Positions 1,246 to 41,500 of a stretch of 64,000 nt of DNA are shown here, piece by piece (position 1 is the stretch's first letter; every line of letters begins with the position of its first letter). The notes below the pieces were generated by a model. It ran no database searches and was not told where the DNA came from. It was given only the letters and a program-made list of their open reading frames with translations. Source of the DNA: Octopus bimaculoides (taxonomy: Eukaryota); contig NC_068983.1 of the NCBI RefSeq assembly GCF_001194135.2, positions 104,279,758-104,343,757 on the forward strand. The letters are read 5' to 3'. A program made the position numbers and the translations under genes.

Positions 1246-2177
1246 GGCATAACTACAGGGTTTTACCCACCAGACTTTGGGAGGTCATAACTTTCAGAAA
1301 AATGAATATTTTTTAATGAAATTTTCTATGCATATAGTATTTACTATGTAGAATCCGAATATACAAATATAGAAACTATCACAGTGTCGCTTCCCGAAGA
1401 ATTTTAAAATGTTAGCTTTCCGAAACTTTTTTTTTCAATCTTGCAAAAACACGAAGATTAAGAATAAACAGAAAAAGTACACAAATATATTTTACATAGT
1501 TGTCGTATACGTCGGTTTTGTTTTCACATAAGATCAATGAAGAACACAAACACGTACTGAAACAGTGACTAAACTTATNNNNNNNNNNNNNNNNNNNNNN
1601 NNNNNNNNNNNNNNNNNNNNNNNNNNNNNNNNNNNNNNNNNNNNNNNNNNNNNNNNNNNNNNNNNNNNNNNNNNNNNNNNNNNTACTTTGGAATTTACTT
1701 CTATTGAGAAAAATAAATCGTGTGCATGTTATTTTTAACGAAAGTTTTCTTATGACGGCTTCTCTTCACTGTCTAGAAATCTACGGATGCACATACGCAC
1801 ATAATAGAGAAAAATGAAACAAATATGGACGACTTGCTCCGAAACACCACCTAGTGGGGAACGCTTCTCAAAAATAACCTGCAGTTGTTTCCTTCAAAAT
1901 TCCTACATGCTCGAAATGTACATACATCAAGGTATATTTTTAGAAAATTTCACGAAAAAATATTAATTTTCCTGGAAGTTAAGAAGAATTTAAGTGGACT
2001 CTGTTGGAATTTCCGAAAATTGTCCCCCACCCCATTCCAAAATATATACAAAATTTTTGTATATTCGGATTCTACATAGTAAATACTATATGCATAGAAA
2101 ATTTCATTAAAAAATATTCATTTTTCTGAAAGTTATGACCTCCCAAAGTCTGGGGGGTAAAACCCTGTAGTTATGCC
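1246..2177. mobile_element. Non-autonomous DNA transposon (MITE), 122-bp TIRs, 8-bp TSD AAAAATAT (Merlin/MULE/hAT-like)
   Basis: 1246-1367 and 2056-2177 are reverse complements with 1 mismatch; both start GGCATAACTACAGGG; AAAAATAT at 1238-1245 and 2178-2185; internal N gap. Confidence 0.88.
1579..1683. other. Assembly gap
   Basis: N run. Confidence 1.
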
Positions 2178-9736: not shown

Positions 9737-9872
9737 NNNNNNNNNNNNNNNNNNNNNNNNNNNNNNNNNNNNNNNNNNNNNNNNNNNNNNNNNNNNNNNN
9801 NNNNNNNNNNNNNNNNNNNNNNNNNNNNNNNNNNNNNNNNNNNNNNNNNNNNNNNNNNNNNNNNNNNNNNNN
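9737..9872. other. Assembly gap within (TA)n
   Basis: N run. Confidence 1.
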
Positions 9873-10339: not shown

Positions 10340-11901
10340 GATAAGACGTAAAACAATAACAATAGCGTGGATAGTCTGCGGAAGTTTAATTGTCTACATG
10401 GAGCGCCGCCTAGCCAAGGGAGATAACCTACTTATAGGAAAGCCCTATTATAAATTCATTTCAATGAGTTTAATTTTCATTTCATTTTGTTGTAAAAATT
10501 TGTTTATCTTTGAACCTAGATTTATCAATGAAAGTTCTATGAATTTGATTTAACAAATTAATATGATTCCACTTGAAAAATTGTTTGACCTCTGCTTTAT
10601 ACATTATTATGCAATCTGGCTTCTTTATATTCTGTGGTACATTGTGTACGTTATTGACAGTAAAGTCTGTGGTTTCCTCTCTTGATAATTCAGAAGTATA
10701 GTTTTCATTTCTTTATACTACAATATGTGATTTATAACTATGATCCTGTAGTATATAGCCTCCTCATATATGAACTTAGAACATTCAGGTTTAAAGTAAA
10801 ACCCACTTGCAATTAGCACTACCATATTTGGTAATGCTGACCAGCACTTGCTTCACTATCTCCTTGAACTTTATCAAAACATCAACTGACATTTTTCCAA
10901 TTCAATCTGCTTTTGATGGGATTTTGGCAGGCACTGACAAACAAAAAAAAAAAGAAGCAAATTTTAATTTCTGTGCCTTGACTCTTTTATCAAGCTTTTA
11001 TAAACCATGGAATTTGGCTCTCTTGAGACCTATGCGATTAACATATCTCTTGACTCTCTCTGGCAATTACACTATCTTAGATTTCATACACTTATTTACT
11101 TACAAAGATACACAATAAATTTGAATTATGCATTTATTATTAAAAGCATTGTCAACAATGTTTCATGTTCTCAGTTTGTCTTTATGTCTTTTTCATCAAC
11201 ATTTAAACCTATAAAAAAAATCCTTAGCAATATACTATATGATCAATTTTCACAATAACCATTTCTCTTAAGTCAATAGTATAATATATGATGAGAAACA
11301 ATACTAATGCTGATGTTGATTCAGTGACTCATGAATGCTAAGCTGAGCATACACAATACAAAACACACCAACTCTTTGGTAATGCACCCAATCATGAAAG
11401 GGAAAATACAGCAAACGATTTCACACAAAGCATTTTATGGTTGACATGAACAGACTGGTAAATCTCCATTATATGCATAATAAATTTAGGTGTGGAATGT
11501 CAATATTATCTCCTTCTAATACAATATATCACCTACTTACATCTTATATGATGTTGATTACATCAAAACTGATGAAGATTTTAGCAACAGACAGAATTGT
11601 CAGCATACATTTTCCAACAAGACAGAATGAGACTAAATATATTCAAAATGCTTTGAATGAATATTCAAGATAAAATGGACAAAGTTTAATACTTTTAAGC
11701 AAAATATTCTTGAAGTATAATTCACAAGTCAATAGCAATATAAATATTACAATTAGACAAGAAAAAACTCAGTCCATAGCAACACAAATATCTAATTTAT
11801 AATTCTTTACAAAAAATTCAGCCTCACCTACATCTTGTACTTACACTTACATCCAACCGTACAGATACTCACATAGTCCTCTAAATATATATATATGTAT
11901 A

Positions 11902-11971
<70 letters not shown>

Positions 11972-12695: not shown

Positions 12696-12802
12696 NNNNN
12701 NNNNNNNNNNNNNNNNNNNNNNNNNNNNNNNNNNNNNNNNNNNNNNNNNNNNNNNNNNNNNNNNNNNNNNNNNNNNNNNNNNNNNNNNNNNNNNNNNNNN
12801 NN
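12696..12802. other. Assembly gap within (TA)n
   Basis: N run. Confidence 1.
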
Positions 12803-13790: not shown

Positions 13791-14304
13791 CATGGAAAAA
13801 TGCGAGCATGAAAAGTAATATTCTTAAGATTATAAACCTGGGAAAGTACAGGACAAGTTATTACACCTGTAAAAGTATAGGACAAGCTATTACTTCTAGT
13901 AAAGTAAAGAATAAGAAACTTTTTACTTAAAATATTGCAGCAAAGAATGCCAGTTTTTCAAATTTATCACTCTTTAGAGTTCTCATATTTTAAATTTATT
14001 GTACAAAACTGTTCAGCTAATTTGTAAGTTTGTCTAATTAGTCATTTTTTTCTGTATTTAAGGTAGTAAATTAGCTAAATTCTAATTAAATAAGTATAAT
14101 GTTATTTGTAAACTATAATAAATTAATTTTTAATATTCAAATTTTTAATTTTAGCTGCAATATTTTAAGTAAAAAGTTTCTTATTCTTTACTTTACTAGA
14201 AGCAATAGCTTGTCCTATACTTTTACAAATGTAATAACTTGTCCTGTACTTTACCAGGTTTATAATCTTAAGAATATTACTTTTTAAGCTCGCACTTTTC
14301 CATG
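13791..14304. mobile_element. MITE, about 151-bp TIRs, TA TSD (Tc1/mariner-like)
   Basis: TA|CATGGAAAA...TTTTCCATG|TA; arms 13791-13941 and 14154-14304. Confidence 0.85.
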
Positions 14305-17379: not shown

Positions 17380-18950
17380 AAAAACTGCAACAAGAGCAAA
17401 AGAGATGCACTAGAGAGAAGAGAGAAGAAACAACAGAGGCATCGAATTATTAGACCAGCTTATGAAAGCTATTCTGAGGATAATTGCAAAACTTAGGCAC
17501 AGTATTAGCCTAAATGAGATTTGGTCCAGCTTTGTCTCAAGAAGAGGCACCATAGAGGCCATTTTCTTTGTGATTCAACCACAAGAGAAATACATGACTA
17601 GGAATAAGCACCTATTCCAAGTGTTTGTTGATCTGGAGAAGACCTTTGACAGGGTCCCTTGCACTGTGATTTAGTGGTCCTTAAGGAAACTAGAAATATA
17701 TGAAGGGTTTGAGAAGGTCATACAATCTATGTATGAAAGGGCATACAGCAATGTGAGAAACAGCAAGAAGTAATAAATTTAGTGAGCAGGACATATTAAT
17801 TCTGTCTCCATTTTATTTATTATATTCCTTAAATTCATAGTAGGGGAACTTAAGACTGGCTCTTCAGTGTTTTGATGGCATAGCTCTTATAACAGAATCA
17901 GTACAAGAATTGAAATTCCAGATATATAAACAAAAATCTGGAACTGAAGACTCTTAAAATAAACTTTGTAAAATCAAAAATTTTAGCAAGAAGTTTTAGC
18001 AGTAAGTGCTAAGAGTGCTCAGGAAATCAATTCCCTTAATTGCCCAGATAGCTTCCAAGAAGTAGTTGACAGTTTTTGCTTTTAGGTGACCCAGTTAACA
18101 GTGGGGATGGATGTTCCAAACGTTTGGTAGTTAGAATGTGTTGGAGAAAGTTCAGGGGGCTTTTGTCTCTACTGGCAATAAAGGGCTTATCCCTCATGAT
18201 CAAGAGCAGATTGTATGATGCTCGTGTGTAAAGTATGTTGTTGCATGACAGCAGTATGTAGGCCTTGATTGCAGAAGATATGCAAAGGCTAGCAAGAAAT
18301 GAAGCAAGCATGCTTTACTGGATAAACCTTGTTAGAATCCATGAATGACAAAGTATAAATGTATGAAGAGATAGCTGAGTTGAAGAGAAATCAGATGTAG
18401 CATGCAAAACAGGAGACTGTGCTGGCATGGGCATGTGATGCAAATGAAAAATGATGCTATAGGAAAGTGGTTATACACCATTAGGTGTACACCCGCTTTC
18501 CTATATTAAATTCTAAATAATAACGGAACGCAGAACTCTGAACTATCAACACAACAATATTTATTTACCGAGGAAATAGGCTTGGTTGCTGAGACGTTGG
18601 AATGTTGTTGTGAGCTGTCCCCAGAGTTGGAATGCTGGAGAGACAGCTTGACCCGTCCATGCTCATGGCCGGCCGACCGAGAAAGAGAATGAAAAGAGCG
18701 GGAACGTTTAGATGTTGAATTCCACGCATGCGCATGGGACTCTTCCTGTGTTCATTCCGGAACACAGTAATGGCGACTGTATTTTGACGCCAAATGACGT
18801 CACTACAATGCAAATGAAGAATTGCTTTAGCAAATGTTGAACACTCAAAGTGAACGGTATGTTTGGAAGAGGGAGACTGAGGAAGTCTTGGGATGAGATA
18901 GTAAGAGTGATCTCAAAATGTTAAATCTAATGAAGATGACAGAAGACCAT
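17380..18950 (+). mobile_element. Degraded RTE-clade LINE (RT and C-terminal region)
   Basis: RRGTIEAIF...QEKY...VFVDLEKTFDRVP; later W..F...PLL and GHVM motifs; many stops and frameshifts. Confidence 0.85.
18453..18807 (-). mobile_element. About 355-bp LTR-like insertion inside the RTE fragment
   Basis: Minus strand begins TGTAGTGACGTC, has AATAAA, ends in a 22-bp hairpin; flanked by a 15-bp duplication ATGCAAATGAARAAT. Confidence 0.55.
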
Positions 18951-21089
18951 GTCGACTGGTGATATGCAGTGCTGTGGAAGGCCCAACTGCCCAAGCAAGC
19001 TTCATGCACATTCTTTACTAAATTGCTTTGTGCACATATCCCCACTATCTATTGCCCTTTCTATATCTTCCTACTATCTATTCTCTTAAGTGCTGTGCCT
19101 ATTATGTACCCTCTTGTCTCTTCTATTTACCATGTCATGCCATCAATAACTGAGAGAAAAGTATTCAATTTGTACATATTGAATATTTCCCTTCCTCTTA
19201 CTTCCTGCTACCCTCCTACCTCTTTCTTCCTGAAACATAACACTTGAGTGGGAAGGGATTGCACTCTGGCAACATTTACCCACCCTCCCTGACTCTCTTG
19301 AGACCACGTTCTCTTGAATACATTACCATGAAGATATGCCCTGGCTTCTTATCATCTTATCTCTCTCCATGCACCTCTCTACCCATCTATGTATAATGTG
19401 GGAGGTAGCACTGAATCTCCTCCTACTCAACCCTCTTCCTCTTCGCCACCCTTACCACTGATCTCTCTCACTAATTTCTTAACACTACTTTTACTTTTCC
19501 ATAATCCTGTTACCCACTTCCATCTTATATTTCCTTCATTCACCACTCATGTGTGATGTAAAGTAGCACATTATACACTGGCGGATAAATTGATACCTAC
19601 TCTGCCTACCCAACTATCACTAAAACTCATTCACACTACATTTCTATTTACCTCCCTTTACTTCTTTCCCTAACACTGTTTATATTAGTCTCTCTGCTAC
19701 CACCATCTCCCAACAACAAGCCTGTATAATTCCTGTAAGAACAGTCCAATGAACATTCCCACCCATACTGACATAGCTAAAGGACCAATCCACTCCATCA
19801 CTAGGTCCATCTATACAACCCACCCCATTACCATTATGTCCCTACTTCTCCTTCACACTAATCACTAACATTATTCTTCCCCTTTCCTTGTCTCAGTTAC
19901 TTTCACCCCAACACTATTCCCTCTGTATTCACCAATACTTTTATCATCATCCACAATAAATCTATTCTATCCTTTACAAGGGGAGCCCTATTTCACTTTG
20001 TAAGCTGCAAGGCAACACCCAGCAGTGCTGGTGTTACAAAAAACACCCAATATTTTCTGTGATTGGTAATTGATTCAAACTGATAACACAGGGCTTGAGA
20101 GGGTTTCTTAGTCTTGCTAACAGCAAGGTGACCACTATAGTTCAGGTGCCATGAAAAAACTGCATCCTGTACACTCTGTAAAGGGGTTAGTTCTAGTAAG
20201 GACATGAAGCTGTAATAACCACAACCAAAACGTGAGACACTGTATCCTGTTGAGCCATCTACTCATACCCACATGAAAAACAGCAAAGATGGGCACTGTT
20301 AATTGAAAAGTTAACTTCAATAACCATGAATCAGTTAATTCTTTAAAAATGTAACATAAGTTATTGGTAAACCGTTAACATTAATTTTTATTCTAGAAAA
20401 AACAAAAAATCAGTTTTTGCTTTCAAACCACCTAAAAACACATTTAAAAAGTGCCAACTGAAGTTGACTCGGAGTTAATGGAAGTTAATTAATCCAATAG
20501 ATTTCCAAAGTTAACTTAAAAGTTAAATCGTTGACAAAAATGTTAACCTCATTAATTAATGATTAAGTTTGGAAAACACACAAAATCATTATCATTTAAT
20601 GTCCGTTCTCAAGGCCAGGGTCTGTACCAAATTCCATAGTCTGTTTTGGCTTGGTTCTTACAGCTGGATACCCTTCCTAACACTCTAGAGTGTACTGGGT
20701 GCTTTTTACATGGCTCCAGCACCCACAAGGTCAGCATGAATTTTATCAGATATGTATCAATTAATCATGGTTTTACTCTTTATTTATTCACATTGGCAAA
20801 TGGTATAGCAATGGTCTTGTTAAAGTAGCGCACCTTGTATAAAAACAGTTTATATCCAAAATAGAAAAAAATGCTGCTAAAATATTGAGAACGAATAGAT
20901 GTTATTACTTGAATTTTTGCTATTCTGCATGCACCTCATAAAAAATATTCCTAACATTAAGAGGTATTAATTCAAAGACAAGGGAAAAGATTTATAATTT
21001 GATTATTCATTAGGGTCAGAGATGTGTTACAAATTTATTAACTAGGTGTTGGACAAGTGACTGAGTTCCTTTCATGTGCTGGGCCTAAC

Positions 21090-23655: not shown

Positions 23656-23699
23656 TTAAGTTTTCTTTCGCTGAGCACAGATGATTTCACGGGAGAGCC
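23656..23699 (-). CDS. METTL18: METTL18 terminal coding exon 9
   Basis: ttttcag|GG CTC TCC CGT GAA ATC ATC...TAA; GLSREIICAQRKKT*, similar to human GLKRFIIEI as recalled. Confidence 0.85.
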
Positions 23700-26600
23700 C
23701 TGAAAACAAAAGAATTCAATATGAAACATTTAAAGAGATTTAGCTGATCAGATTGAACCTTTAATAATAATAATGAAATTATTGTATACAGTGCTCAGGT
23801 GCACTACAACTTATCAAAAGTGCGCATAAAGCATATGCAGTATTGTACAAATGTCTGGAAAATGAACAGTGTGTAAGTCAGATACATGCTTGCGTGTGTA
23901 TGGAGGGGAGAAAATCAGGTGTAGTGTTGGCGAATCTCAGGAAGCATGGAAGTTTTGAAGGATGCAGTGCTCCGACAACTAACAACTGATGCCGGCAGTT
24001 TGTTCCAAACTTCAGCAACTCTTAGCATGAAAAAGTGTTTCCAAAAGTCATGGGAGCTGTGCTGTTTTCTGACTTTGTAAACATGTCCACGAGTGTTAGA
24101 CAGGTGGAATTTGAAAAGGTGCTCAGAGTTATTGTTACTAAGATGGTTAATAATTTTATGGGCGTCTGCCAAGTCAGCTGCCAGACGTCGGAGTTTCAAT
24201 GTACCCATACCCAGGGAAGTAAGGCGTTCAGAATATGGCAAATGCCTGATGGAGGGTATTCTCTTGGTTGCACGTTGCTCAACGGTTTCCAGACGATTAA
24301 TATCCTGGGCAAGATAGGGGTTCCAGACCGGAGACGCAAATTCCAGGTGAGGCCACACCACAGCTATATAAAGACTCAGATAGATAGCCAGAGAGCGGCT
24401 CACAAAGGACTTGGTAAGTGATGCCAAGACACCCTCAGCCTTCTTGGCAATTTTAGCAATGTGTTTTGTCCAATGCAAATTGCTGTCAACAATAATGCCC
24501 AGGTCACGTTCGCAAGAAGACTTTTTGAGATTAGTGTTGTGGAGGGAGTAAGTAGACACTGGGTTTTTCCTCCCAATTGAACCACAAAACCTTCACGAAA
24601 GAAAGGGATAACTTTTAAAATGGCAACTAAGGTCCAATAATAACAATGCAATCCTGAAGTAAAAGAGTTGGTATTTAAAAAAAAATTGCATATTTATATG
24701 ACCAAATAAATAAGATAGTAAAGGCCAGAGGAAGAGAAGGTTTTGGGCAAAAATTTCCATTTGGTATTTTGTTTCCCTAACATTTATCTTTGAGCTACTG
24801 CTCAAGCAATGCAAATAGCAGGGTGAATAAAGGTTCATTAAAAGTTCTGCCCAATACTGATTTTGCTAAATATTTTAAGTAAATATTGACTAGTTAGTGC
24901 AATATATCAAATGATTTGAATCAAGAACAATAGGATTTAGCTATGAATAAAACAACATTTAAACATAAGATACTGATTTCAAATTTTAACACAAGGCCAG
25001 CAATTTGGGGGGGGATAGGGTAAGTCAATTACATCAACCCTAAAGTTCAACTGGTACTTATTTTACCAACCCCAAAACGATGAAAAACAGTCTACCTTGA
25101 AAGAATTTGAATGTAGAATGTGAAGATAAATGAAATGCTGCTAAGCATTTTGTCCAGCATGCTAATGATTTTGCCAGCTTGCCACCCTAATTAAACATAA
25201 GATACTATTTTCAAAGTTCAGAAAGCTCCTACCTCTACTGGTGACAAAGGGCCTCTTGCTCAGAGTGAAAGGTAGATTGTATGATGCATGTGTGTGAACT
25301 GCCATGCTACATGGCAGTGAAACATGGGCCATGACTGTTGAAGACATGTGTAGGCTTGAAAGAAATGAAGCTAGTATGATCTGCTGGATGTGTAATGTCA
25401 GTGTGCACACACTACAGAGTGTAAGCACCCTGAGAGAAATGTTGGACATAAGAAGCATCAGATGTGGTGTGCAAGAGAGACGACTGCACTGGTATGGTCA
25501 TGTGCTGCATATGGATGAGGAGAGCTGTGTGAAGAAATGTCACTCTCTAACAGTGGAAGACATGGGAAGAGGTGGTGAAGCATGACCTTCGAACATTGGG
25601 CTGCACAGAGGCAATAACGAAAGATCGAGACCTCTGGAGATATATGCTGTAATTGAGAAGACACAGAAAGTAAAGGGAGATCATAGCTGTAGCCTACACC
25701 AGTGTCGCATAACCAGCCCATTTAAAAAGTATCTTTGAATCGTCAGGTGACATTCTGTGCTTCAAATCAAATCACAATCAAATGGAATTGTAGTTGTGGC
25801 CGATGCCAATGCTGTCTGACTGGCTCACGTGCTGGTGGCACATAATAAGCACCATGCATGCATGGGTCATTGCCAGTGCCATCTGACTGGTTCCCCGTGC
25901 CAGTGGCACGTAAAAAGCACCTTCTCAACATGGTCGATGCCAGCCTCCCCGCCCTGACTGGCTCCTGTGCCGGTAGCACGTAAAAAGCACCATCCAAACG
26001 TGGCCGATGCCAGTGCTGCCTGACTGGCTCCCATACTGGTGACACATAAAAAGCACCCACTACACTCTCAGAGTGGTTGGCGTTAGGAAGGGCATCCAGC
26101 TGTAGAAACACTGCCAGATCAGATTGGAGCCTGGTGCAGCCTCCTGGCTTGCCAGTCCCCAGTTAAACTGTCCAACCCATGCCAGCATGGAAAACAGACG
26201 TTAAACGATGATGATGATGATGATAGTTTCTGAGTTCTTATATTATTTATTGAGAAATGTCAGAAACTCTTCCTGCAACAGTCATTGATTTGTACATCTG
26301 GTATCCAATGTTTGTTATGTAACCTCAGTCATTTCTGTCTGAGCAAACCTACATGTTTTAAGAACTAAATATTAGGTCAGTATTTCTACACAAATATTAG
26401 GTCAGTATTTCTACACAAAGCCAAACAATGAAGTTTGTTTTAAATGAAATTTTTAATGAAAATTACATAGTCATACATTTATGTATTTGTTTTGCAAAAT
26501 TCTTGATAATTGTGTTGAAACAGATATTGTTGCACTTGGAGATGGTCTTTTTTTTTTTGCTGATTAAGCACATGCACTATTTAAAAATAATATGAATAAA

Positions 26601-29600
26601 AACTAAAGTGAAGATCAAATAAATAGTACATGTGTTTAATTAGCAAACAAAAAAAAAATTAATATTTCCTAAGTATAACACTACATAGTAATAATTACAA
26701 ATGAATGATCAGAAATGAATATCAATTAAGTGACTAACAGTTTTTGATTTAAAATCTTAATAAACCTAAATATATGGCAATGTCTTTTAACTTATCAATG
26801 AAACATTTAACAAAAGGCATCCCAATAACTAGAAAAGATCATGAAGGTTAACTAAGATACTTGCTTGAATGTAAACATTCCGATTGTGAAAACTGTTATT
26901 ACATTGGAAATACACAAATACTTTACAAACACTTTGTATTATACTTTACTCACCATCAGCTTTTGTCCAGCAAACAGAGGATGTAAAACGGCCATCCTCT
27001 TTCAGTGATTCTTCAAACTGTCTAGTTCCACCTCCAACACCAAAATAGTAGTTTTTGGCAGCGATTAGACTTGAGAGTTAGTTAAGAATTAATATCATTC
27101 ATTTGTTTAATGTCCATTTTCCCATGCTAGCATGAGTTGGATGAATGCTTATTACTGAAGCATTATTTTATTGTCCTTCCTGTCACTAACCCATAAATAT
27201 TTTTCAAGTAGTACAGCACTACATGATGTTTTGTTAACAAGAAATGTCAACATGTCATCATTTCATATAAATGATTTCATGCAAAGATATGGAATATAAC
27301 TGTTCACACAGACACACACATACATTTATGCTCAGAATGATGAGATGGGTGGTGGAAAATTTCATTTTCCACTAACCATTATGATTTTATATAAATCTTT
27401 TATATTTGTGCAACCAAATGTATTGATTGATGTAACATCTCCACTAATTATCAACATGATTGGAACTGATTAATAAATGTAAATTCATCACCTGCATTTA
27501 TTTGTTTACATTTATTACCTGTGATGGATGCACCATTCTGTTAATCAATACATATCCTTGGATGTACAGTTTGTATGGAGCGTCTCTTTTGAAATAACTA
27601 ACTACTAATTTTAATTTTCCTTCATTTACATTCAGTTTGCTTGAATTTTCCATGAGGTACTTGCTACTCACAAGTATTGGCTGACTTGAGGCTTCTGTAA
27701 AAGACATTTACATATAAGGTGCCAAGGAATGAGACAGAACTATATGGTTACAGAGTAAATTCTGTGTCCACACAACCATACATGCACTTCTTTATATCAT
27801 ATCACATAATACTATATTGCACTGATGATGATGATGATGGTGGTAGCCATGATGGCGTTGATTAGAAGAAAACAAAGGATACATGTAACCATTTTCTTTT
27901 AGTAAGAAATCAAATATGTTGATCAGTTTCTGGTAATTTTTGGTGTTGTAAATTGTTTCTGCAGTCAATATTATGTCAAACCTACAACAAAAGAAATATT
28001 CTTTTCTACTCTAGGCACAAGGCCCGAAATTTGGGGGGGGGGGGTCCAGTCGATTAGATCGGTCCCCAGTGCGTAACTGGTACTTAATTTATCGACCCCA
28101 AAAGGATGAAAGGCAAAGTCGACCTTGGCGGAATCTGAACTCAGAACATAATGACAGACAAAAGACCACTAAGTATTTTGCCCAGTGTGCTAACATCTCT
28201 GCCAGCTTGCAGCCTACAACAAAAGAAATATTAAAGAAAAAAATGTTTAACCCTTTTCTTACTATTTTCTGTTGAACTACACTGCGTTTGTGTCAATTAA
28301 TTTTGAAAATAAGAAAGAATTTAGTAAAATGTCTTGAACATTATTAATATGATAATTGGAACATGAATTAACATGGAATTTTAATGGGAAGCGTTTTAAT
28401 TTAGATTACTTTATATAGGAAGTTTGTATTTTAGAAGCAGGGGAAGTCTTGGGCAGATTGGTATCAAAAGGGTTAAGTAAAAGATTGGGTTTACTTTCAG
28501 TACCCTCCTTAAGCATTTTATTAACAGTAGGGTATATGACAGTTTTTGTTCTTTTTTGTAAACAGTCTCTTTCTATGTTTCTGTATCTTCAAATGTTATT
28601 GCCAATCCAAAACTTTCCAAGACCAAGGTCTGATAACTTGTTATTGTTTAGCCCCTGGGTCACTCATGGTCAAACAGCCCTAGGAGCAAAAAGCATTGCA
28701 CTCATAGCCCTTACATGTTTTTGTATACCCAAGAATACATTTTCCAACATATCCTTCCTGCTTTTTTTTTAACATGATATAGCATGATACTGGGCTTCTA
28801 TCTCTAGCAGATGGAGTAATCACTGACTACAGTGGTAAGGGCTGTGCCTGTTACTTCAAACCAACAAGACCACAGGTGCTGGCAATATCCCTTCTGCTAT
28901 TCACCAAACTTTCTCTTTCTCTCTCTGTATATATTTATCTATCTGTGAAGGCACATGGCTCTCTGGTTAGCATGTCAGGCTCACAATCATGAGGTAGTGA
29001 GTTCAGTTCCTGCATGAGGCTGTGTGTTCTGTTCTTGAGCAAGACACTTTATTTCATGTTGCTCCAGTTCACTCAGCTGTAGAAATGAGTTGCAATATCA
29101 TTGGTGCTAAGCTGTATCAGCCTTTCCTTTGGATAACATCAGTGACATGGGGAGGGGAGGCTGGTATGCGTGGGCGACTTCTGGTCTTCCGTAAACAACC
29201 TTGCCCAGACTTGTGCCTCTGAGGAGAACTTTCTAGATGCAATTCCATGGTTATTCATGACCAAAGGGAATCTTTACCCTTTTTTTTTTAATCTATCTAT
29301 CTGGATCTTTCTTACTTTTTGGGAACACTACTACAGGGAGTCATATTTCCAGTAAATGCAATCCCTCATGTTCTGCTAACTATCAACCTATTTCTCTCAC
29401 TTCCATGTCCCTGGTTTGAAGATAACTTCCTCCCTTTCTCCCACTAGTCACAAAACCTTCCTCTGACTAAACCACTAAAAAAGTTATTGCAGTAAAAAAT
29501 AGTGGGCTAACACTTTGAAATTCAAGAGTTCTAAACAGTACCAATGGTAAGATGTGAACTGTAAATCCATACATGAGACAATTATTCTAACAACTTAGTT

Positions 29601-32600
29601 AGCTACAAAACATGAAATGTTTAATAAAAGTTCCAAAATGGTAACAGGTACTGTATTGGGAAAGGGACATCTGTACCTTTACTTACTTCTGCAGAGAAAT
29701 GGTAGAATGAGTAACAGCTTGTGGAAGGCTACCCCAGCCTCCACTAAAAAGATAACATCTTTCTCTTTCTTCATAGCAATTGAGCAAAATGTTTGGAAGC
29801 GTTAATTTGGTGAGCACTTCACTGTTCTGTAAAATAAATTGATATTTTTATACTTTTGATATATTTTAAATAAAATTTTTATTTTTTTTTATTTTGTTTT
29901 AACCCTTTAACATTTAATCCAACCATATCTAGCCCAAATATTCTACTTGTTTTATGTTAAAAGTGACCAGATCCAATCTCTCACTTCTACTCTAAAATGT
30001 CATTCTAAAAATATACAAACACACCACTGAAATCTTGAAGTTACAAGATAATGCATGATTAATTCAAGACAATGTGAATAAATAAACAATTCATTTGAAA
30101 AAGAAATCAGAATGCTAAAGGATTAAACTGCAAATGTAAAAATCTTCACACTGAAATATATGTATGCCAGTTTAAATGTATGTTAATGTGTGTGTGTTTG
30201 TTTAATGTACTCATTATATACTGTTTCATCTTAGCTTCACATGGTGTATATAGTGTAATGTATAGTATGCATTGTACCTAATAACAGTAATATTCAGTAA
30301 TCCAGTATATCTCATACTGACCTATCACAATAGTATGTCATGCAGTGCTAAAAGTCACATTGACCTGCCCTGGGAGTAGACGTCATACAATGTTATAAGT
30401 CATGTTGAGCTATCCAAACAAGATGTTTCTTATGATATGATGTCATATATCTTAAATATGCCACATCTCTTTTGTTTAGGTTCAATTTATAAACACCTAG
30501 TATGCTACTGGTATTTTTATCAGAAATGTGAAAACTGAACTAACTACTGTAAATCACCAAATCTGATCCTTTCTCATCAGCAATACTACCAGTGTCTTGC
30601 ATTCACTGATAATAACCAGATAAATAAACTGTATGTTTTATATATAGGCCTACAGTGATAGGTATAACATGATTCTACTATTTCATTCAATAAAAGTTAA
30701 TTTGATAAATTTTATAGTTTATTTCAGGCAGACACTGGAAAAAGATTTTAAACTATATTAAAAATTGTTTAACAGATTCTGTTTATTAAACAAACATATT
30801 CAAAGAGAAAATCAACAAAAATTTTGTCATGGACACATTTTGAATTTTTTTTTTCTAATTTAAATTATGTATGTGATGAAATTAAAAGCAAAAGATTACA
30901 TTTCTTAAATACACACACACACATTTGGTTTTTCTTGATATATTTAGAACTTCACTTTGAAGCATGATCTCAAAATGTAATGACAAGGAACCAGGATGTC
31001 TGGTGACATGAGATTCTTGGAAGACCCATACAAACTAAATTCTGGAAGCGCTATGTGTATGTATACATACATAAATTAGGGCCCTTTGCCCAATGTCTCC
31101 CTCAAGACACCCCCACCACACATCATCTCTCTAACTGCAGTATTTTCTTGATACCACTAATCTTCTTCAATCCCCAGAATCATTTCATTTGATATACATC
31201 CCTCATCTTTAATACTGTCCTCTTTCCCACACTATTTTTACACTTCCTTCCCCCTGCCTGAGTCACCAAATCATCTCACCTTCTCCACCACCATACATTT
31301 CTCACTCCCCCCACGCACTATACCAGCCTCTCTCCCATACCCACTTTCACAACTACCCCACCCCAAACCATGTCATATCTCTCTCTCTCTCTCTCATACT
31401 TCCTTTGTCTATTGTACCATCATTACTATTATTCTACTACACTTCACACCCATGCATCATTAGTCACCCTCCACTCTTTATCAACCATTCACTGCATCCA
31501 TCTCTCATCCCTTCCAAGTTTCTACAGTTGTCACCTACTTTTCCCTACCTACCCCACTTAACATCCACTCAACACTTGTTCTTCATTCATTATATTCAAC
31601 CCTTCAACCATTCTCCTCCCTCATTCCCCCATACACCCTTGCAACCTTTATCCACCCACACTCCCATTTCTCCTGCCTTTATTCACACCTACTTAGCTTG
31701 TACCTTGAGGGTCCACACAGACACCCCATTACTGTTATTTTTATCACTTCCTCACTGCATTCTGATTAATCCCCCACACCCTCTATATTGAATGGGAGCA
31801 GCCATGTAGTCCCTCCACAACAAGAAACTTATTCACCTCTGACCCCTTCCCTCATACTTTAATCCCTCATCTCCTAGCATAAAACTGCTTCTCTCAGGAT
31901 TCATAGCTATGCAAGCTGTATGGCACCCTCTCTAGTCCTGGCATTATTCAAAAAACATTAAGCATACAAACTGTAAAATAGCTGACATTAGCTAAGTGCA
32001 TCCAGCCACAAAAACCAAGCCAAAGTAGGTAAGTAAAGTAAAGTTACCTTCTCAGGTCATACCAACTGATAAGGGCCAATTTCCCAGTTTCATAATGTAT
32101 ATATTCTACACCTGGATGGAACGCCAGTCCATCATAGGAATAGTCATTTTTGCCAGCTGAGTGGACCGGAGCAATGGGATATGAAGTATTTTGCTCAAGA
32201 ATACAATGCATTGCCTGGTCCAGGAATCAAAACCATAATTTTATGATCATGAGTCCAGCATCCTAACTACTAAGCTATGCACCTCCACAAGCCAAAGTAG
32301 ACAGTAAATACAAGGTTTTTACCAGTTCAAATAAACTTGGGGTATATTTGAACCCATAAGAAAGTCATTCACTGTGCTTTGTCATGGAGAAAATTTCTCG
32401 CTGTAGACAAATGGTGTAAGTACACCTAAAATTAGCTCTCAGCACCACCTACCTGCAAGAAAGCTATAAAGTGAACAGCTTTCTTATGGGTTCGAATATA
32501 CCCCATGTATATTAGAACTGGTAATAGCCTTGTATTTATATATAACACTGCTTAGTGTTGCCATCCTGTAAAGCATAGTGGAGCACAATGCAATCCTTCA

Positions 32601-35600
32601 GTCCAGCCATCTAGCCCATGGAACATGAACGTATGATGATGATGATGATGACGACGACTTAAAACATCTCATCTTGTGCTGCATCGTCACGACCACTGCA
32701 ATGTCCACAGTGATTATGAATCTGAAACAATCAACCAAAGAAAGATAAACACCCTGTCTACTATGAAAGAATAAATACATGCTATGCTTGAGAAGACCCA
32801 TCAAGACAAGTGATACCGGTGTCGGTGTCACATAACTGGCATGTAAATAGCATCTTTTGAGCAGTGGGCCTCATAGAGGCAAAGGCAAATGACTGGGATC
32901 TTTGGCAATAAGCCATGCTTGAGCAGAAGACCCATCAAACCAAGTAAAATCATAGTTGTGACAGATATTAGTGTCACATAACTGGCACCTGTGCTGGTGG
33001 CACATAAAAGCACCCAATACTCTCACGGACTGGTTGGCATTAGGAAGGGCAGCCAGCCATAGAAACCACTCCAACTCAGACTGGAGTCTAGTGCATCCCC
33101 TCAGCTCACCAGTCCTGGTCAAACTGTCCAATCAATGCCAGCATGGACAATGGACGTTAAACGATGATGATGATGAAGCTACAATTACATTATGCCATTG
33201 ATTGACCAGTTAACAGAATGTGACCCAGTATGTTATGTCACATTTTCCTTTTGTAACAACATGTAACTTACTACAAGTCTGAGTTAAAGGCAGTTAGAAC
33301 CTACCATTCTTTTATCTTTTACTTGTTTCATTCATTAGAAGGTGACCATGCTGGGGCACCACCTTCAAGAATTTTAGTCTGACCTAACGACCCCAGTACT
33401 TATTATTTTTTGGTAAAGCCCGGTACTTATTCTAACAATCTTTTTTCTTGAACTGCTAAGTTACAGGGACATAAACACACCAACATCAGTAGTCAAGCAA
33501 CGGGAGGGGGGAAAATACATGCACTAAGACACACACACACACATACATATACGATGAGCTTTTTTCAGTTTACGTCTACCAAATCTGCTCACAAGGCTTT
33601 GATCAGAACACACTTGCCTTAGGTGTCAGTCCCGCTTTTGGTTATATTATTATATGTAGTGCTAATATTGTTACAAATAACACAAATAAAAAGAAATCAT
33701 ACATATAATACAAATACTTACAAAATCTTGGAAGAGTACAGTGCTAGCACCTTTTTTCAGTGCACACAGTCCTGGTAATCCTGCACCACAACCAATCTGT
33801 GAAGAAATGTTTACAGTTAGATTTTAGTTACATTCATAGATTCCACTTTTTAATCTGTGTCCTATGATGAAATGTTGTAAATGTATTATTGTGGAATGCA
33901 CTGAGTAGACAGTTTATTGAATGAACTACTCAAACGTACACACAGCAAAATCAACACAAGAATTCATTACCGATATATATATATATATTTGTGATAAGTG
34001 GGGATTAACTTTAATGCATAAAATAATACCTACCTCAGCTACTGATGATCCAGAAAGCGTTTCATTACTTATATATTTTGTAAGATCTATGCTGCATTCC
34101 CAAATCTGAAGTCCACCTAAATTGAAAAAAAAGTTCTATGTATTTGTGAGCAAGCAATCACACACAAACACACACATACATACACAGAGGCACAAGAGTA
34201 GCTGTGTGGTAAGAAGTTTGCTTCCCAATCTCTGGGTTCAGTCCCACTGTGTGGTACCTTTGACAAGTATCTTCTACTATAGCCTTGGGCCAACCAAAAC
34301 TTTGTGAGTGGATTTGGTAAATGGAACCTGAAAGAAGCCCATTATGTACATGTGTGTGTGTGTGCAAGCATGTATGGTGGGGTCATTGGGTCTGTGTTTG
34401 TCCACCACCACCACTTGACAACCAGTGTTGATGTGTTTATGTCCCCATAATTTAGTGGTTCAGCAAAAAAGACCAATAGAATATGTGCCAGGCTTAAAAA
34501 AGAAATATTGGGATTGATTCATTTGACTAAAAATTCTCCAAGGTGGTACCCCAGTATGACTACAGTTTAATGACTGGAACAAGATAAAAGATATATACAT
34601 ATACATATATATATAGGAAGGACATACATTTACTAGCATGGAAAAACAGATATAAAAATGAATGAATGACAGGCATGGCTTATAAGCGTGCACATGAATG
34701 CATGATTAAGATTTCTTCACTGCATGGTATCTTGTGTGTCTTCTATTGCCCTAGGCCAAATGAAGCCTTGTAAGTGGATTTAGTAATGGATTCATAAAAG
34801 TTAAAATGTCTGCCAATTTGCAAATTGCTACCACTGTGTGTATGGCTTTTTATTACATTGAATTTTGCTCCAATGTAATAGTGTCATCTCTTTTGCAGCA
34901 GAAGCATTTGAGGTACAAACATTTTACCTTTATCCCCTACATTTGTTAAGGGCAAAATATATAACAACAAGGAAAATAGTTGTATTTGAAAATACCCAAA
35001 GAACTGCAGTTGATTATGCCCATAATGACAGCCAAAAAAAAAAAAAAAACTAACTGATGATGAGTTATCAGAGCACAAGACATTTTTAGGTTTTGTTTCA
35101 AGCATCAAATCATATCAAACCATTTGAATTTAGTCTCAAAATAAATTTTTTAAATGGTTTAATCCTATAATTCATATATTCAAATATGCACATCTCTCTC
35201 ACTGCTGGTCTCTCTTGATACCACTTTATTTTTCTTGCTGCCTGAAACCATTTCACTTGATAGACATTCTACATCCATTAATATCATTCTCTCTGCTCAT
35301 GTTACACTGATCATTGCCACTGAACCATCAAATTCTCTCTCCTTATGCACTATGCAAAGTACATTAGTGACAATGAAATAGAAATTATATCTTTCAGTTC
35401 TTAATCTTATGATACCACGTCCCAAAACATTGATGAATGGCTGTGGCTAGAAAATGTAACTGAATATTTCATTAGCTATCTATACACCATGTTTACACAA
35501 GCAGAGCTATCTGTGGCAACTCAACAATATTTTAAACAATTTCATATAATCTTAGTCAAGTTGTCAATTTTTTTAATGACTTGAAAATGCACTTCCTCGA

Positions 35601-38545: not shown

Positions 38546-41500
38546 GTAAGAATCTTACAATTTTATTCTATTCTTCACAGCCAATCAGATGAAATGCCTG
38601 TCTTAGTATACTAATTCGTCTGTGTATATATATTATTTTTATATGCTAGTTTAAAATACCTGGGGTTTTTTTTCCAAGCTTATAATTTATATTCTAGAAA
38701 ATATTTAATTACTCAGTGTACTTCTATGCTCCTCTTCACGCAGAGAATTTTTATTTAATTTCAATAATACCTAAATATTGCTTTCTAAGCATGTCAACTC
38801 CCTGTTTATAATGAACGTTATTATGTAGAAAATGCTTGCTATATCCATGATATTATTTTGTTAGTAATTATAATTATAAAAATTCTAATTTTTATTCATT
38901 CCTGAGCATAGAATATCTTGTACTTTTTTTGTTTTGTTTTATTTCCAATTGCAAACGTAAAGCATAAAGGACTACTTGGGCTTCATTTCATAATCAGTAT
39001 TTCTTATGTTATAGTTTTTAATGTTTCATTTCCTATCTCTGATCTATTATGGTATATAACAAGCAATAATGATATTCTTATAATTTTTATAAAAGTAATA
39101 AAGAGTTTAAAAAAATAACCTGCTATGAAATATTAATGCAGAAAATGGCTCCTCCCACTTTAAGACTGATTAACAAGTGATTCTTTTTATGGCGTTTGAG
39201 ATTTAGGTTCCGCTTTGTTAAATGACACTGAAAATGGTTTTTCATTATTAAATATTCCAGTTTATTACAGAACATGTTTAAATCCAGTTATTTTTCCCCA
39301 TTCAGATGATTTCTCTTGTCTTTCTTACCACTTCTTAATTGATGCCACACTTGCTTGTTGGCCACACAGCTTTATTTACTGTCTAGATTTTCAATGTATA
39401 TATTGTAAATAACAATTTTTTTTATTGGTTTCTTAAAAGGAAAATTTAATGTGTCTTCCTCTAGAATGTTAGCATTCAACGTAAATTGTTTTGTTTTTTT
39501 TTCCAAACATGACACAAGAATGGCTTTAATTTTGTTGAGTGAACTCCAACTTTGAAGAGAATGAGTTGGATCGACTGCGACCATGCTGGAGCACCGCCTT
39601 TTAGTCGAACAAATCGCCCCCAGGACTTATTCTTTGTAAGCCTAGTACTTATTTTAACGAATTCTTTTGCCGAAACACTAAGCTACGGGGACGTAAACAC
39701 ACCAACATTGGTGTCAAGCGATGGTGGAGGGTGAGAGACAAACACAGACACACACATAAATTTCTTTCAGTTTCCGTCTACCAAATCCACTCACAAGGCT
39801 TTGGTTGGCCCGAGGCTATAGTGGCCAAAGTGTCACACGCTGTGGGACTGAACCCGGAACCATATGGTTGGGAAGCAAGCTTCTTACCACACAGCCATTA
39901 TTTATCGATTGTTACATTTTTAAAATACATACGACTGCTTTTGAAGGGAAACAACTCGTAAGTCTATTATTGTAAATAAGTTTAAATTTGTGTAGATGTT
40001 GATACGTTCGGAGAATGCATGAAACATTAACAAGTGAATGGAACCGTTTTTTCTAGTTAGTGTTTTGGTACATCAACCTACCATACTAACTGTGTTTGGT
40101 AGTGCAAGTGTTTCACAGCCAAGTGGCTGACTGAAACCATCCTCTTTGTTACATCCCTCCGCATTACAGTTCGGGCAAAAAACACAAATGCATAGAGAAA
40201 ATCCTACCTCTCCTAACTGGATAGCTTTTACTAAACCCTGTTAACTCCCGCAAGACCACCATCTGAAACTCAGAAAAAGTATCTGTGCGTCACATAACCC
40301 ACAAGAACTCACACTTTCTAAACTGCAGCCAAGCCCTTTGGCCATTTGCCAAATGAATTCTTTCAATTTTGAAGAATCCTCACTCTCTTCATTTCTCAAC
40401 TATAATGACTCTACAAAAGTACTTGACAGAAAAATCTACACATTTGTCGTCTTCTTTGCATCCAACTCTACATTACTCTAGGTAAATCTCCAAAACTAGC
40501 CTCTCCAGTCCACCAGAATCACTACCACATACATTTGCACAAATGTCAAAACACTTATAATTACTTCAAACCAACAAGACCACAGGTCCTGACAGTATCT
40601 CCTCTGTTAACTTTGAACCATGAATACCAGAGTTAGCCCTTACTTTCACCAAACTCTCTCTCACTCTCTCTCTCTCTCTCNNNNNNNNNNCTACACTCTC
40701 TGAGTGGTTGGCGTTAGGAAGGGCATCCAGCTGTAGAAACTCTGCCAAATCAGACTGGAGCTTGGTGTTGCCATCCGGTTTCACCAGTCCTCAGTCAAAT
40801 CGTCCAACCCATGCTAGCATGGAAAGCGGACGTTAAACGATGATGATGATGATGATATTGATTGATCACTCTTTGGAAACACTACTATAGTGTGTCATAT
40901 TTTTCTCATTTCCATGTCCCAGATTTCAGGATAACTTCCTTCATCTGACTAAACCATTAAAAAGGTTATTGCAGTAAAAAACTGTGCAAAGTCAAGATGG
41001 ATTTGTCATCAGGCTAGAGATATGGTTCAAATGCTTGCAACAGAATGGACTCTGCTAAAGGCACTCAAAGACCAGGTGGTCATGTTAAAACAAGTGATGA
41101 ATTAAAAAGTATATGCTGACAGGCTTCTGCAATTGTAATCCACACAATTTCACTCATAAGACTATGTAACAAGATAGTTACCCAAAGTACTGCACAGTGG
41201 GAGTGAGCATAGAACCCCACAATAGCAAAACAATTTAACCACAGCCATACTTATATTCATATGTAATTATATTTTCGATATCTCTAACTTTTGCAGTATT
41301 CTATTCTCCTGGTCTCACTAACTACATTCTTCTGTCATATGAACTTATTCAGTTTATTTATCTCTTCTCTTGTTAAGAATATCATCTCACTTTATAGATC
41401 ATGTACTATTTTCCCAACCCTTGCAGAAATTTCACGTCTTTACAACTGTGTATATTTTTTCCCCAACTGTTCACTTGCAAAGAACCAAATTACACATTAA

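What the first reader, a model, noticed from the sequence alone, without database searches (positions are those of the whole stretch)
27883..28246. SINE insertion duplicated the 3' splice site of METTL18 exon 7, creating a potential poison acceptor
Seen: the 20-bp TSD of the family C SINE is, on the gene strand, AATATTTCTTTTGTTGTAG|G, the complete acceptor plus first exonic base. It now occurs twice, at 27981 (in-frame) and 28213 (232 nt upstream). The upstream copy has the longer pyrimidine tract (CATTTTTTTCTTTAATATTTCTTTTGTTGTAG); the in-frame copy has a competing AG about 20 nt upstream. Using the upstream site would read LQAGRDVSTLGKILSGLLSVIMF-TGA, a premature stop before the TAETIY and YFGVGGG motifs. 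Inference: a SINE-made alternative-acceptor / NMD switch controlling enzyme dosage, or a recently tolerated deleterious allele.
Basis: partly seen in the sequence, partly recalled or inferred. Interest (0 to 1): 0.72.

Follow-up and report, generated by a model that had tools for sequence, protein, structure and literature searches.

The report
Old SINE duplicated a splice acceptor
An ancient, fixed SINE sits exactly at the intron 6/exon 7 boundary of an octopus METTL18 gene and left two identical splice acceptors, but every RNA data set checked uses only the in-frame copy, so it looks like a tolerated insertion rather than a regulatory switch.

Summary
An exact 20-nt direct repeat (27981-28000 and 28213-28232) flanks a 212-nt copy of a very abundant SINE. 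On the gene (minus) strand the repeat is AATATTTCTTTTGTTGTAG|G, the acceptor of METTL18 coding exon 7. Using the upstream copy would give K-LQAGRDVSTLGKILSGLLSVIMF-stop.

The functional reading is not supported.
- Seven RNA contig sets and two raw RNA-seq runs show only the junction 29687->27981.
- No read or contig joins exon 6 to 28213.
- Raw-read power is low: 9 clear junction reads, so the upstream site could still account for up to about 28% of steady-state mRNA.

The insertion is neither recent nor an artefact.
- Six DNA runs of the species carry the filled site at single-copy depth.
- A second coded organism in the DNA runs has the 3' junction.
- The Octopus vulgaris orthologous locus has the same SINE with both repeat copies (19/20 and 20/20).
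- Argonauta hians has a single acceptor and no such SINE.
- The old branch-point/pyrimidine region is no more conserved than the rest of the intron.

Best reading: a neutral, long-fixed SINE that is now simply intronic, with a silent pseudo-acceptor upstream. The closest known case is the canine merle PMEL SINE. Interest is low.

The parts
28213..28232 (-). Upstream copy of the 20-nt direct repeat (gene strand AATATTTCTTTTGTTGTAG|G). AG is at 28215-28214. This is a pseudo-acceptor with no detected use.
   Evidence: The repeat is exact. No read ends or joins at 28213. No contig joint appears there. It is 19/20 conserved in O. vulgaris.
28001..28212 (-). 212-nt SINE body, in sense orientation to the gene. 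Box A-like TAGCACACTGG and box B-like GAGTTCAGATTCC lie near the 5' end, then a C12 tract and a GTAGAAAAG 3' end.
   Evidence: There are seven relatives in the window and a family alignment. Copy depth is huge in DNA and RNA. ARAGORN and Rfam find no tRNA or RNA family.
27981..28000 (-). Downstream copy of the 20-nt repeat. This is the acceptor actually used (AG at 27983-27982; first exon base 27981).
   Evidence: The joint 27981<->29687 is seen in raw reads (X21 5 reads, X22 4) and in contigs of X2, X3, X6, X4, X5, X8 and X10. It is 20/20 conserved in O. vulgaris.
27883..27981 (-). METTL18 coding exon 7 (99 nt), encoding (K)FDIILTAETIYNTKNYQKLINIFDFLLKENGY.
   Evidence: RNA contig pieces cover 27883-27979. 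It aligns to human METTL18, PDB 4RFQ. It is 99/99 identical in O. vulgaris.
29687..29826 (-). METTL18 coding exon 6 (140 nt). Its donor GT is at 29686-29685.
   Evidence: Joints 29826<->33722 and 27981<->29687 define it.
27982..29686 (-). Intron 6 (1705 nt) as actually spliced. It contains the SINE, the upstream repeat copy and at least two other high-copy repeats.
   Evidence: The joint skips 1705 nt with GT..AG on the gene strand. Repeat pile-ups occur at 28270-28480 and 28977-29138.
28233..28254 (-). Ancestral polypyrimidine tract (catttttttcttt) and best branch-point-like motif (GTTAAAC, A at about 28247). It now lies about 266 nt from the used AG.
   Evidence: Motif scan. Conservation against O. 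vulgaris is not above intron background.
28141..28143 (-). TGA that would end the reading frame if the upstream acceptor were used.
   Evidence: Translation of exon 6 joined to 28213.
26954..27069 (-). METTL18 coding exon 8 (contains YFGVGGG). The last coding exon lies at 23659-23700. Both are downstream of the hypothetical premature stop.

Best explanation
A tRNA-related, CORE-like SINE retrotransposed in sense orientation into the T-rich end of METTL18 intron 6 in an ancestor of the Octopus species compared here. That was after the split from Argonauta and before the split from O. vulgaris.

Target-primed insertion duplicated about 17-20 nt spanning the last 19 intron bases and the first exon base. 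The gene now has two identical 3' splice-site cores 232 nt apart.

The spliceosome uses only the exon-proximal copy. The SINE and the upstream copy are removed as part of a 1705-nt intron, and a normal METTL18 is made.

The inferred reason is exon definition. The proximal copy is followed by the real 99-nt exon with its own sequences and donor. The distal copy is followed by SINE sequence and would define a 331-nt exon. A further inference is that the branch point now used lies in the SINE 3' end or in the repeat itself.

Shown: the anatomy, exclusive detection of the in-frame junction, fixation, and sharing across species. Inferred: why the proximal copy wins, and where the branch point is.
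For: - Anatomy.
- In-frame junction 29687->27981: raw reads of X21 (5) and X22 (4); RNA contigs of X2, X3, X6 (depth 17.7-85.1) and X4, X5, X8, X10 (depth 15.7-31).
- No junction to 28213 in any of these. In one search the depth over 28212-28236 is flat (X20 6, X22 3, X21 0), so no read ends at 28213.
- Unspliced reads cross the SINE 5' junction in X20 and X22, so those animals carry the SINE.
- Filled site at single-copy depth in X25, X26, X32 and X28, X30, X34.
- O. vulgaris locus L001 is collinear and has the same SINE and both repeat copies. Its annotated protein P0001 uses the same in-frame junction.
- Argonauta L002 has one acceptor and no such SINE.
- No excess conservation of the upstream acceptor region: 7 mismatches in 100 nt, against about 5% in the rest of intron 6.
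Against: - By sequence criteria the unused upstream copy looks the better acceptor. It keeps the ancestral pyrimidine tract, a 39-nt AG-free zone and branch-like motifs at -34 and -18. The used copy has AGs at -21, -26, -29 and -31, and only one consensus-like branch motif, at -73. Exclusive use of the proximal copy is therefore not predicted from the core signals alone.
- Raw-read power is small (9 clear junction reads).
- Logan contigs drop rare variants.
- A PTC isoform would be depleted by NMD.
- No branch point was mapped.
Confidence: 0.75

Rival explanations
1. Poison acceptor. The upstream copy is used in a fraction of transcripts, or in particular tissues or conditions. The 331-nt SINE-containing exon brings in a stop codon, the isoform is degraded by NMD, and METTL18 dosage is lowered or regulated.
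For: - The two 3' splice-site cores are identical from -19 to +1, and the upstream one keeps the ancestral pyrimidine tract and branch-like motifs.
- The stop lies 24 codons in, upstream of two more exon junctions.
- Both AGs are intact in two species.
- The raw-read bound is loose: 0 of 9 reads gives an upper 95% limit of about 28%.
Against: - No such junction in three raw RNA-seq runs or seven RNA contig sets from three studies.
- The upstream acceptor region is not conserved above intron background.
- Coverage across 28212-28236 equals that of the neighbouring intron, as expected for unspliced pre-mRNA only.
Confidence: 0.15
2. The ancestral branch point and pyrimidine tract upstream of 28232 still nucleate spliceosome assembly, and the distal AG at 27982 is chosen in the second step. 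On this reading the old signals are still functional rather than a relic.
For: The only well-formed branch/pyrimidine arrangement in the area is the ancestral one. The SINE 3' end has a poor one.
Against: - The ancestral branch-like A would be about 266 nt from the used AG. The identical AG at 28215-28214 and several more inside the SINE lie in between. Established AG-scanning behaviour would pick the first of these.
- There is no excess conservation of that region.
- The predicted fold of the region is no more stable than shuffles (z = -0.42), so looping-out is not supported.
Confidence: 0.05
3. Assembly artefact, or a recent, polymorphic, mildly deleterious allele.
For: A perfect 20/20 repeat is what a young insertion or a mis-join would show.
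Against: - Independent contigs from six DNA runs span both SINE/flank junctions with 0-1 mismatches, at the same depth as the unique flanks.
- A second coded organism has the 3' junction.
- An independent long-read O. vulgaris assembly has the same insertion.
- The copy is only about 80% identical to the majority base of five other window copies, and 83.5% identical to its O. vulgaris orthologue.
Confidence: 0.01

Closest known systems
Canine merle allele: SINE insertion at the intron 10/exon 11 boundary of PMEL (SILV)
   Same: A tRNA-derived SINE landed exactly on an intron/exon boundary. It is flanked by a target-site duplication (15 bp there) that contains the original splice acceptor, and the original acceptor next to the exon can still be used (PMC7349775).
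   Different: - The merle SINE is in reverse orientation. Its poly(T) acts as a pyrimidine tract and pushes splicing to a cryptic acceptor inside the SINE in a length-dependent way, giving a phenotype.
- It is a young, segregating allele.
- Here the SINE is in sense orientation, has no long homopolymer tail, is fixed and shared between species, and no aberrant junction is seen.
Alu/SINE exonization and SINE-borne cryptic splice sites
   Same: An intronic SINE offers splice-site-like sequence that could bring SINE sequence and a premature stop into the mRNA (general description in PMC7349775, and established knowledge).
   Different: In classical exonization the sites are inside the element, mostly in antisense copies, and need activating mutations. 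Here the candidate site is a copy of the gene's own acceptor made by the target-site duplication, and it is not detectably used.
Experimental cis-competition between duplicated 3' splice sites, and the exon-definition model (established knowledge: Reed and Maniatis 1986; Berget 1995; not re-read here)
   Same: Two identical acceptors compete in cis. Classical work showed that the exon sequence next to each copy, and the size of the exon defined, decide which one wins. That matches the exon-proximal copy winning here.
   Different: This is a natural, evolutionarily old duplication in a cephalopod, with only 1 nt of exon duplicated. The explanation is applied by analogy and was not tested here.
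Octopus tRNA-derived SINEs (OR1/OR2/OK; OR1 is a CORE-SINE)
   Same: Abundant, about 200-nt, box A/B-bearing element in an octopus genome. The central segment ...GCCTTTCATCCTTTTGGGGTCGATAAATTAAGTACC resembles the CORE domain as I recall it from MIR. OR1 is listed as an octopus CORE-SINE in PMC4824008.
   Different: No reference sequence of OR1 or the CORE domain was available to align, so family assignment is a lead only.

Membership tests
SINE (non-autonomous retroposon) | Short (about 100-500 nt) dispersed element in many diverged copies | tested here: met
   212 nt. Seven other copies at 68-80% identity in 64 kb. Summed contig depth is 10^5-10^6 times single copy.
SINE (non-autonomous retroposon) | Flanked by a target-site duplication | tested here: met
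   Exact 20-nt direct repeat at the element's ends. Another copy (22539) shows a 9/10 repeat at the same boundaries.
SINE (non-autonomous retroposon) | Pol III-type head (tRNA-like, box A and box B) | tested here: inconclusive
   Box A-like TAGCACACTGG and box B-like GAGTTCAGATTCC can be read in the sequence and recur in family copies. ARAGORN finds no tRNA and Rfam finds nothing.
SINE (non-autonomous retroposon) | 3' tail shared with a partner LINE, or a simple-repeat tail | tested here: inconclusive
   Family copies end in GTAGAAA(A/G)GATTATTATT-like tails. The partner LINE was not sought.
CORE-SINE superfamily / octopus OR1 | Conserved CORE central domain of about 60 nt | not tested
   Resemblance recalled from memory only.
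Poison (NMD-coupled) alternative splice site | Alternative site introduces a premature stop upstream of a later exon junction | tested here: met
   TGA at 28143-28141, 24 codons after the junction. Exons 8 and 9 follow.
Poison (NMD-coupled) alternative splice site | The alternative junction is actually produced in vivo | tested here: not met
   No 29687->28213 junction in three raw runs or seven contig sets. Power is limited.
Poison (NMD-coupled) alternative splice site | Isoform rises when NMD is blocked | not testable with these tools
   No NMD-inhibited data set available.
Poison (NMD-coupled) alternative splice site | The element is conserved above the neutral level | tested here: not met
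   Upstream repeat copy 19/20. The 100 nt before it have 7 mismatches, against about 5% in the rest of intron 6. The SINE body has 16% mismatches.
METTL18 / HPM1 protein-histidine methyltransferase | Seven-beta-strand methyltransferase domain (Pfam Methyltransf_16), best match to METTL18 | tested here: met
   PF10294 E 4.1e-13. Human METTL18 structure 4RFQ E 6.7e-37, against METTL21A 2.9e-05. Named orthologues across animals.

The most novel reading that the evidence does not exclude
The duplicated upstream acceptor is a real, conditionally used poison site. In some tissue, stage or stress the spliceosome switches to 28213, the SINE-containing exon triggers NMD, and dosage of the ribosomal-protein histidine methyltransferase METTL18 is tuned. 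This switch would have been created by a SINE target-site duplication and kept in Octopus for tens of millions of years.
Probability: 0.05. Interest if true: 0.55.

Novelty: new member of a known kind. Interest (0 to 1): 0.2.

Why it matters
As it stands this is a tidy natural example, not a discovery. A retroposon's target-site duplication copied a complete 3' splice site of a conserved housekeeping gene. The gene has carried both copies since before two Octopus lineages split, with no detectable mis-splicing.

Its modest value is as a natural cis-competition experiment in a cephalopod. The copy that kept the ancestral branch-point and pyrimidine context loses completely to the copy that kept the exon. 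This fits exon definition, and implies that the SINE 3' end now supplies the working branch site.

If the upstream site were shown to be used under some condition, it would be a clear case of a regulatory NMD switch born from a target-site duplication.

Tried and rejected
- Protein search with the 79-aa exon 6+7 peptide found nothing. The 212-aa query worked.
- Loose-end listing on small references, meant to count individual junction reads, returned almost nothing usable. I used the flat depth profile across 28212-28236 instead.
- The 5' SINE junction in organism B could not be recovered at 88% likeness. Only its 3' junction is supported, and I could not see where its 8 mismatches lie.
- Rfam and ARAGORN on the SINE gave no tRNA or RNA family. 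The one Rfam hit (OrzO-P, E 0.78, 19.9 bits against a cut-off of 60) is chance.
- RNA folding of 27883-28290 was no more stable than shuffles (z = -0.42). I dropped the idea that structure hides the upstream acceptor or loops out the SINE.
- An apparent match between the octopus branch-point region (GGGTTAAAC) and Argonauta (AGGTTAAAC) proved to lie inside a repeated Argonauta element. It is not orthologous.
- Two long ORFs in the downstream introns (23915-24559 minus, 25304-25585 plus) gave no Pfam hit.
- Splice-site scoring with a trained model was not possible offline. It would be nearly uninformative anyway, because the two 23-mers differ only at -20, +2 and +3.
- A recursive-splicing reading was rejected: AG|GCTGCA has no donor-like sequence after the AG.

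Full report
**What is in the sequence**

On the + strand, CCTACAACAAAAGAAATATT occurs at 27981-28000 and again at 28213-28232. The two copies are identical and 232 nt apart. On the minus (gene) strand this reads AATATTTCTTTTGTTGTAG|G.

The 212 nt between the copies (28001-28212) have seven diverged relatives (68-80% identity) elsewhere in the 64-kb window. In DNA contig sets of the species this stretch attracts summed depths of 10^5-10^6 times the single-copy level.

An alignment of six window copies shows the family features:
- it starts (A)GGCAGC.AGCTGGCAGA;
- it carries box A-like and box B-like motifs (TAGCACACTGG, GAGTTCAAATTCC; the latter recurs in other copies);
- it ends GTAGAAA(A/G)GATTATTATT.

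So this is a SINE in the same orientation as the gene, flanked by a target-site duplication. The outermost GG and the AATATT of the 20-mer may partly be microhomology with the element's own ends. ARAGORN and Rfam recognise no tRNA or RNA family in it, so "tRNA-derived" rests on the box motifs only.

**The gene**

RNA contigs and reads define minus-strand exons at 35635-(>=35790), 34034-34116, 33722-33796, 29687-29826 and 27883-27981, all with GT..AG introns.
- The translation matches Pfam Methyltransf_16 (E 4.1e-13).
- Its best solved-structure match is human METTL18, PDB 4RFQ (E 6.7e-37). The alignment runs smoothly across the exon 6/7 junction.
- The closest database protein is a 294-aa Octopus vulgaris protein (96% identity). 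Next is "histidine protein methyltransferase 1 homolog" of Argonauta hians (74%).
- Mapping the O. vulgaris protein back onto the window gives nine coding exons: start codon at 38262, last exon at 23700-23659. Exon 27883-27981 is the seventh.

From the 2015 genome and transcriptome runs, about 2.3 Gb of DNA contigs, and 96% protein / about 95% intron base identity to O. vulgaris, I infer the window is from an Octopus species such as O. bimaculoides. The run labels are coded, so this was not verified.

**What the upstream copy would do**

Joining 29687 to 28213 reads ...SLQK LQAGRDVSTLGKILSGLLSVIMF, then TGA at 28143-28141. This lies ahead of TAETIY (27965-27948) and YFGVGGG (27047-27027), and of two further exon junctions.

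The two 3' splice-site cores are identical from -19 to +1; the 23-mers differ only at -20, +2 and +3.

By sequence the upstream copy looks the better site:
- it keeps the ancestral tract catttttttcttt;
- it has a 39-nt AG-free zone;
- it has branch-like motifs at -34 (GTTAAAC) and -18.

The in-frame copy is preceded by SINE sequence with AGs at -21, -26, -29 and -31. Its only consensus-like branch motif (TCTAATC) is at -73.

**What the RNA shows**

- In raw RNA-seq, the joint 27981<->29687 is seen in X21 (5 reads) and X22 (4 reads). No joint to 28213 reaches the listing threshold in X20-X22.
- Laying the same runs on 28167-28300 gives flat, whole-number depth from 28212 to 28236 (X20 6, X22 3, X21 0). 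It continues at similar depth into the intron. So no read stops at 28213, and the reads there are unspliced pre-mRNA.
- Those unspliced reads also prove that the RNA-seq animals X20 and X22 carry the SINE. This matters because the in-frame junction would look the same in an animal lacking the insertion.
- Assembled RNA contigs from seven older runs in three studies all contain the 27981<->29687 joint at depth 15.7-85.1. None contains a joint to 28213.

Limits:
- only about 6% of each raw run was read;
- nine clear junction reads with none alternative bound the upstream site at roughly below 28% of steady-state mRNA (rule-of-three type estimate, my arithmetic);
- contigs drop rare variants;
- NMD would deplete the isoform;
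- there is no data set with NMD blocked.

**Is it real, recent or polymorphic?**

- DNA contigs of X25, X26 and X32 span both SINE/flank junctions with 0-1 mismatches, at depths equal to the unique flanks. For example X25 has 38 and 55 at the junctions against 51 and 54 in the flanks.
- X28, X30 and X34 each have one zero-mismatch contig across 28180-28272 at single-copy depth, with no empty-site contig.
- A second, coded organism (X38) has a contig running from exon 7 through the repeat and 24 nt into the SINE, with 8 mismatches in 197 nt. Its 5' junction was not recovered.
- The strongest evidence is the O. vulgaris chromosome-level assembly. It is collinear with window 30000-26800 and contains the same SINE at the same place with both repeat copies.

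| Region, compared with O. vulgaris | Result |
|---|---|
| Upstream repeat copy | 19/20 (one T>C inside the pyrimidine tract) |
| Used (downstream) repeat copy | 20/20 |
| Exon 7 | 99/99 |
| SINE body | 83.5% identical |

The annotated O. vulgaris protein uses the in-frame junction.

In Argonauta hians the orthologous exon has a single acceptor, tttgtgttgtag|GTTTGA. It has no duplication and no member of this SINE family in 21 kb.

The insertion therefore postdates the Octopus/Argonauta split and predates the split from O. vulgaris. If the window is O. bimaculoides, that split is put at about 34 million years ago in PMC10700109. The "recent allele" and "assembly artefact" readings are excluded.

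**Is the upstream acceptor under selection?**

Against O. vulgaris:

| Region | Mismatches |
|---|---|
| Intron 6 outside the SINE | 71 in 1417 aligned bases (about 5%) |
| 100 nt just upstream of the upstream repeat copy (old branch point and pyrimidine tract) | 7 |
| Upstream repeat copy | 1 of 20 |

Neither region is better conserved than background. So there is no sign that the old signals or the pseudo-acceptor are maintained. Equally, 20-100 nt is too short to show that they are decaying. The perfect 20/20 identity of the two copies within the window is not significant at these divergences.

**Most likely mechanism**

The element inserted by target-primed reverse transcription into the A/T-rich end of the intron. 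The repeat starts with AATATT, which resembles the family's (ATT)n tail. This step is inferred.

Since then the exon-proximal acceptor has been the one used. The best available explanation comes from established work on duplicated 3' splice sites and exon definition, and was not tested here:
- the proximal copy is followed by the genuine 99-nt exon and its donor;
- the distal copy is followed by SINE sequence and would define a 331-nt exon.

A corollary concerns the branch point. The ancestral branch-like A lies about 266 nt from the used AG, with the identical AG and several others in between. So the working branch point is almost certainly inside the SINE 3' end or the repeat itself. Its position is not resolved. 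The last 45 nt of the SINE are only 82% conserved between species. The predicted fold of the region is unremarkable (z = -0.42).

**Comparison with known cases**

The closest described case is the canine merle allele. There a SINE sits at the intron 10/exon 11 boundary of PMEL, flanked by a 15-bp target-site duplication that contains the original acceptor (PMC7349775). That element is antisense, young and segregating. It diverts splicing to a cryptic site inside the SINE depending on poly(T) length.

Here the element is sense, old and fixed, and has no visible effect. The case belongs with SINE insertions at splice sites and SINE exonization in general. The family itself is probably one of the octopus tRNA-derived SINEs; OR1 is a CORE-SINE according to PMC4824008. 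This was not tested against a reference.

**Verdict**

Novelty: a new member of a known kind. Interest: low (0.2).

The residual novel possibility is conditional use of the upstream site as an NMD switch, which I put at about 5%.

Noticed in passing
window 28001-28212 versus L001 12902-13112: Between the window and O. vulgaris the SINE body has about 16% mismatches (34 in 212), three times the roughly 5% of the surrounding intron. Of the 35 differing columns (34 mismatches plus one gap), 26 are transitions and 10 touch a CpG. The mismatches split evenly between the two lineages (13 vs 14, 7 ambiguous). Faster decay of SINE sequence (methylated CpGs?), ectopic conversion, or polishing errors in repeats could explain it.
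   Followed up: partly
L002 15475-15761 (Argonauta hians): In Argonauta, a different interspersed repeat of about 290 nt lies about 45 nt upstream of the same exon 7 acceptor. Other copies are at 13839-14045 and 19169-19243, with inverted copies at 11757-11934 and 18464-18564. It is followed by a long CT-rich tract. The 3' end of this intron therefore took an independent repeat insertion in a second lineage.
   Followed up: partly
window 29758 (exon 6): In RNA run X21, 7 of 9 reads show T>A on the + strand. X20 and X22 show none. On the gene strand this changes AGA to AGT (Arg to Ser, by my reading of the codon). It is probably a coding polymorphism of METTL18.
   Followed up: no
window 28270-28480 and 28977-29138 (intron 6); 27805-27866 (intron 7): Further high-copy repeats lie in the same introns, with large pile-ups in DNA and RNA runs. 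A (CAT)n-type microsatellite follows just after exon 7. Argonauta also has a CAT/CAC-rich run just after its exon 7.
   Followed up: no
L001 1-4655 and L002 1-2845 (minus strand); expected in the window above 38262: In both O. vulgaris and Argonauta the head-to-head neighbour of METTL18 is a TFIIIC subunit gene (Pfam TFIIIC_delta, zf-TFIIIC). The arrangement is conserved. It was not checked in the window.
   Followed up: no
run X44: A run labelled 'insect metagenome' (metatranscriptomic) holds 67% of the sampled words of METTL18 exon 6 of this octopus-like genome. Possible explanations are contamination, diet or a labelling problem.
   Followed up: no
window 1579-1683, 9737-9872, 12696-12802, 40681-40690: Four runs of N (assembly gaps, 358 bases in all). 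None is near the finding.
   Followed up: no
window 23915-24559 (minus) and 25304-25585 (plus), intron 8 of METTL18: Two long ORFs (214 and 93 aa) have the look of retroelement remnants, but neither has a Pfam match at E <= 0.01.
   Followed up: partly
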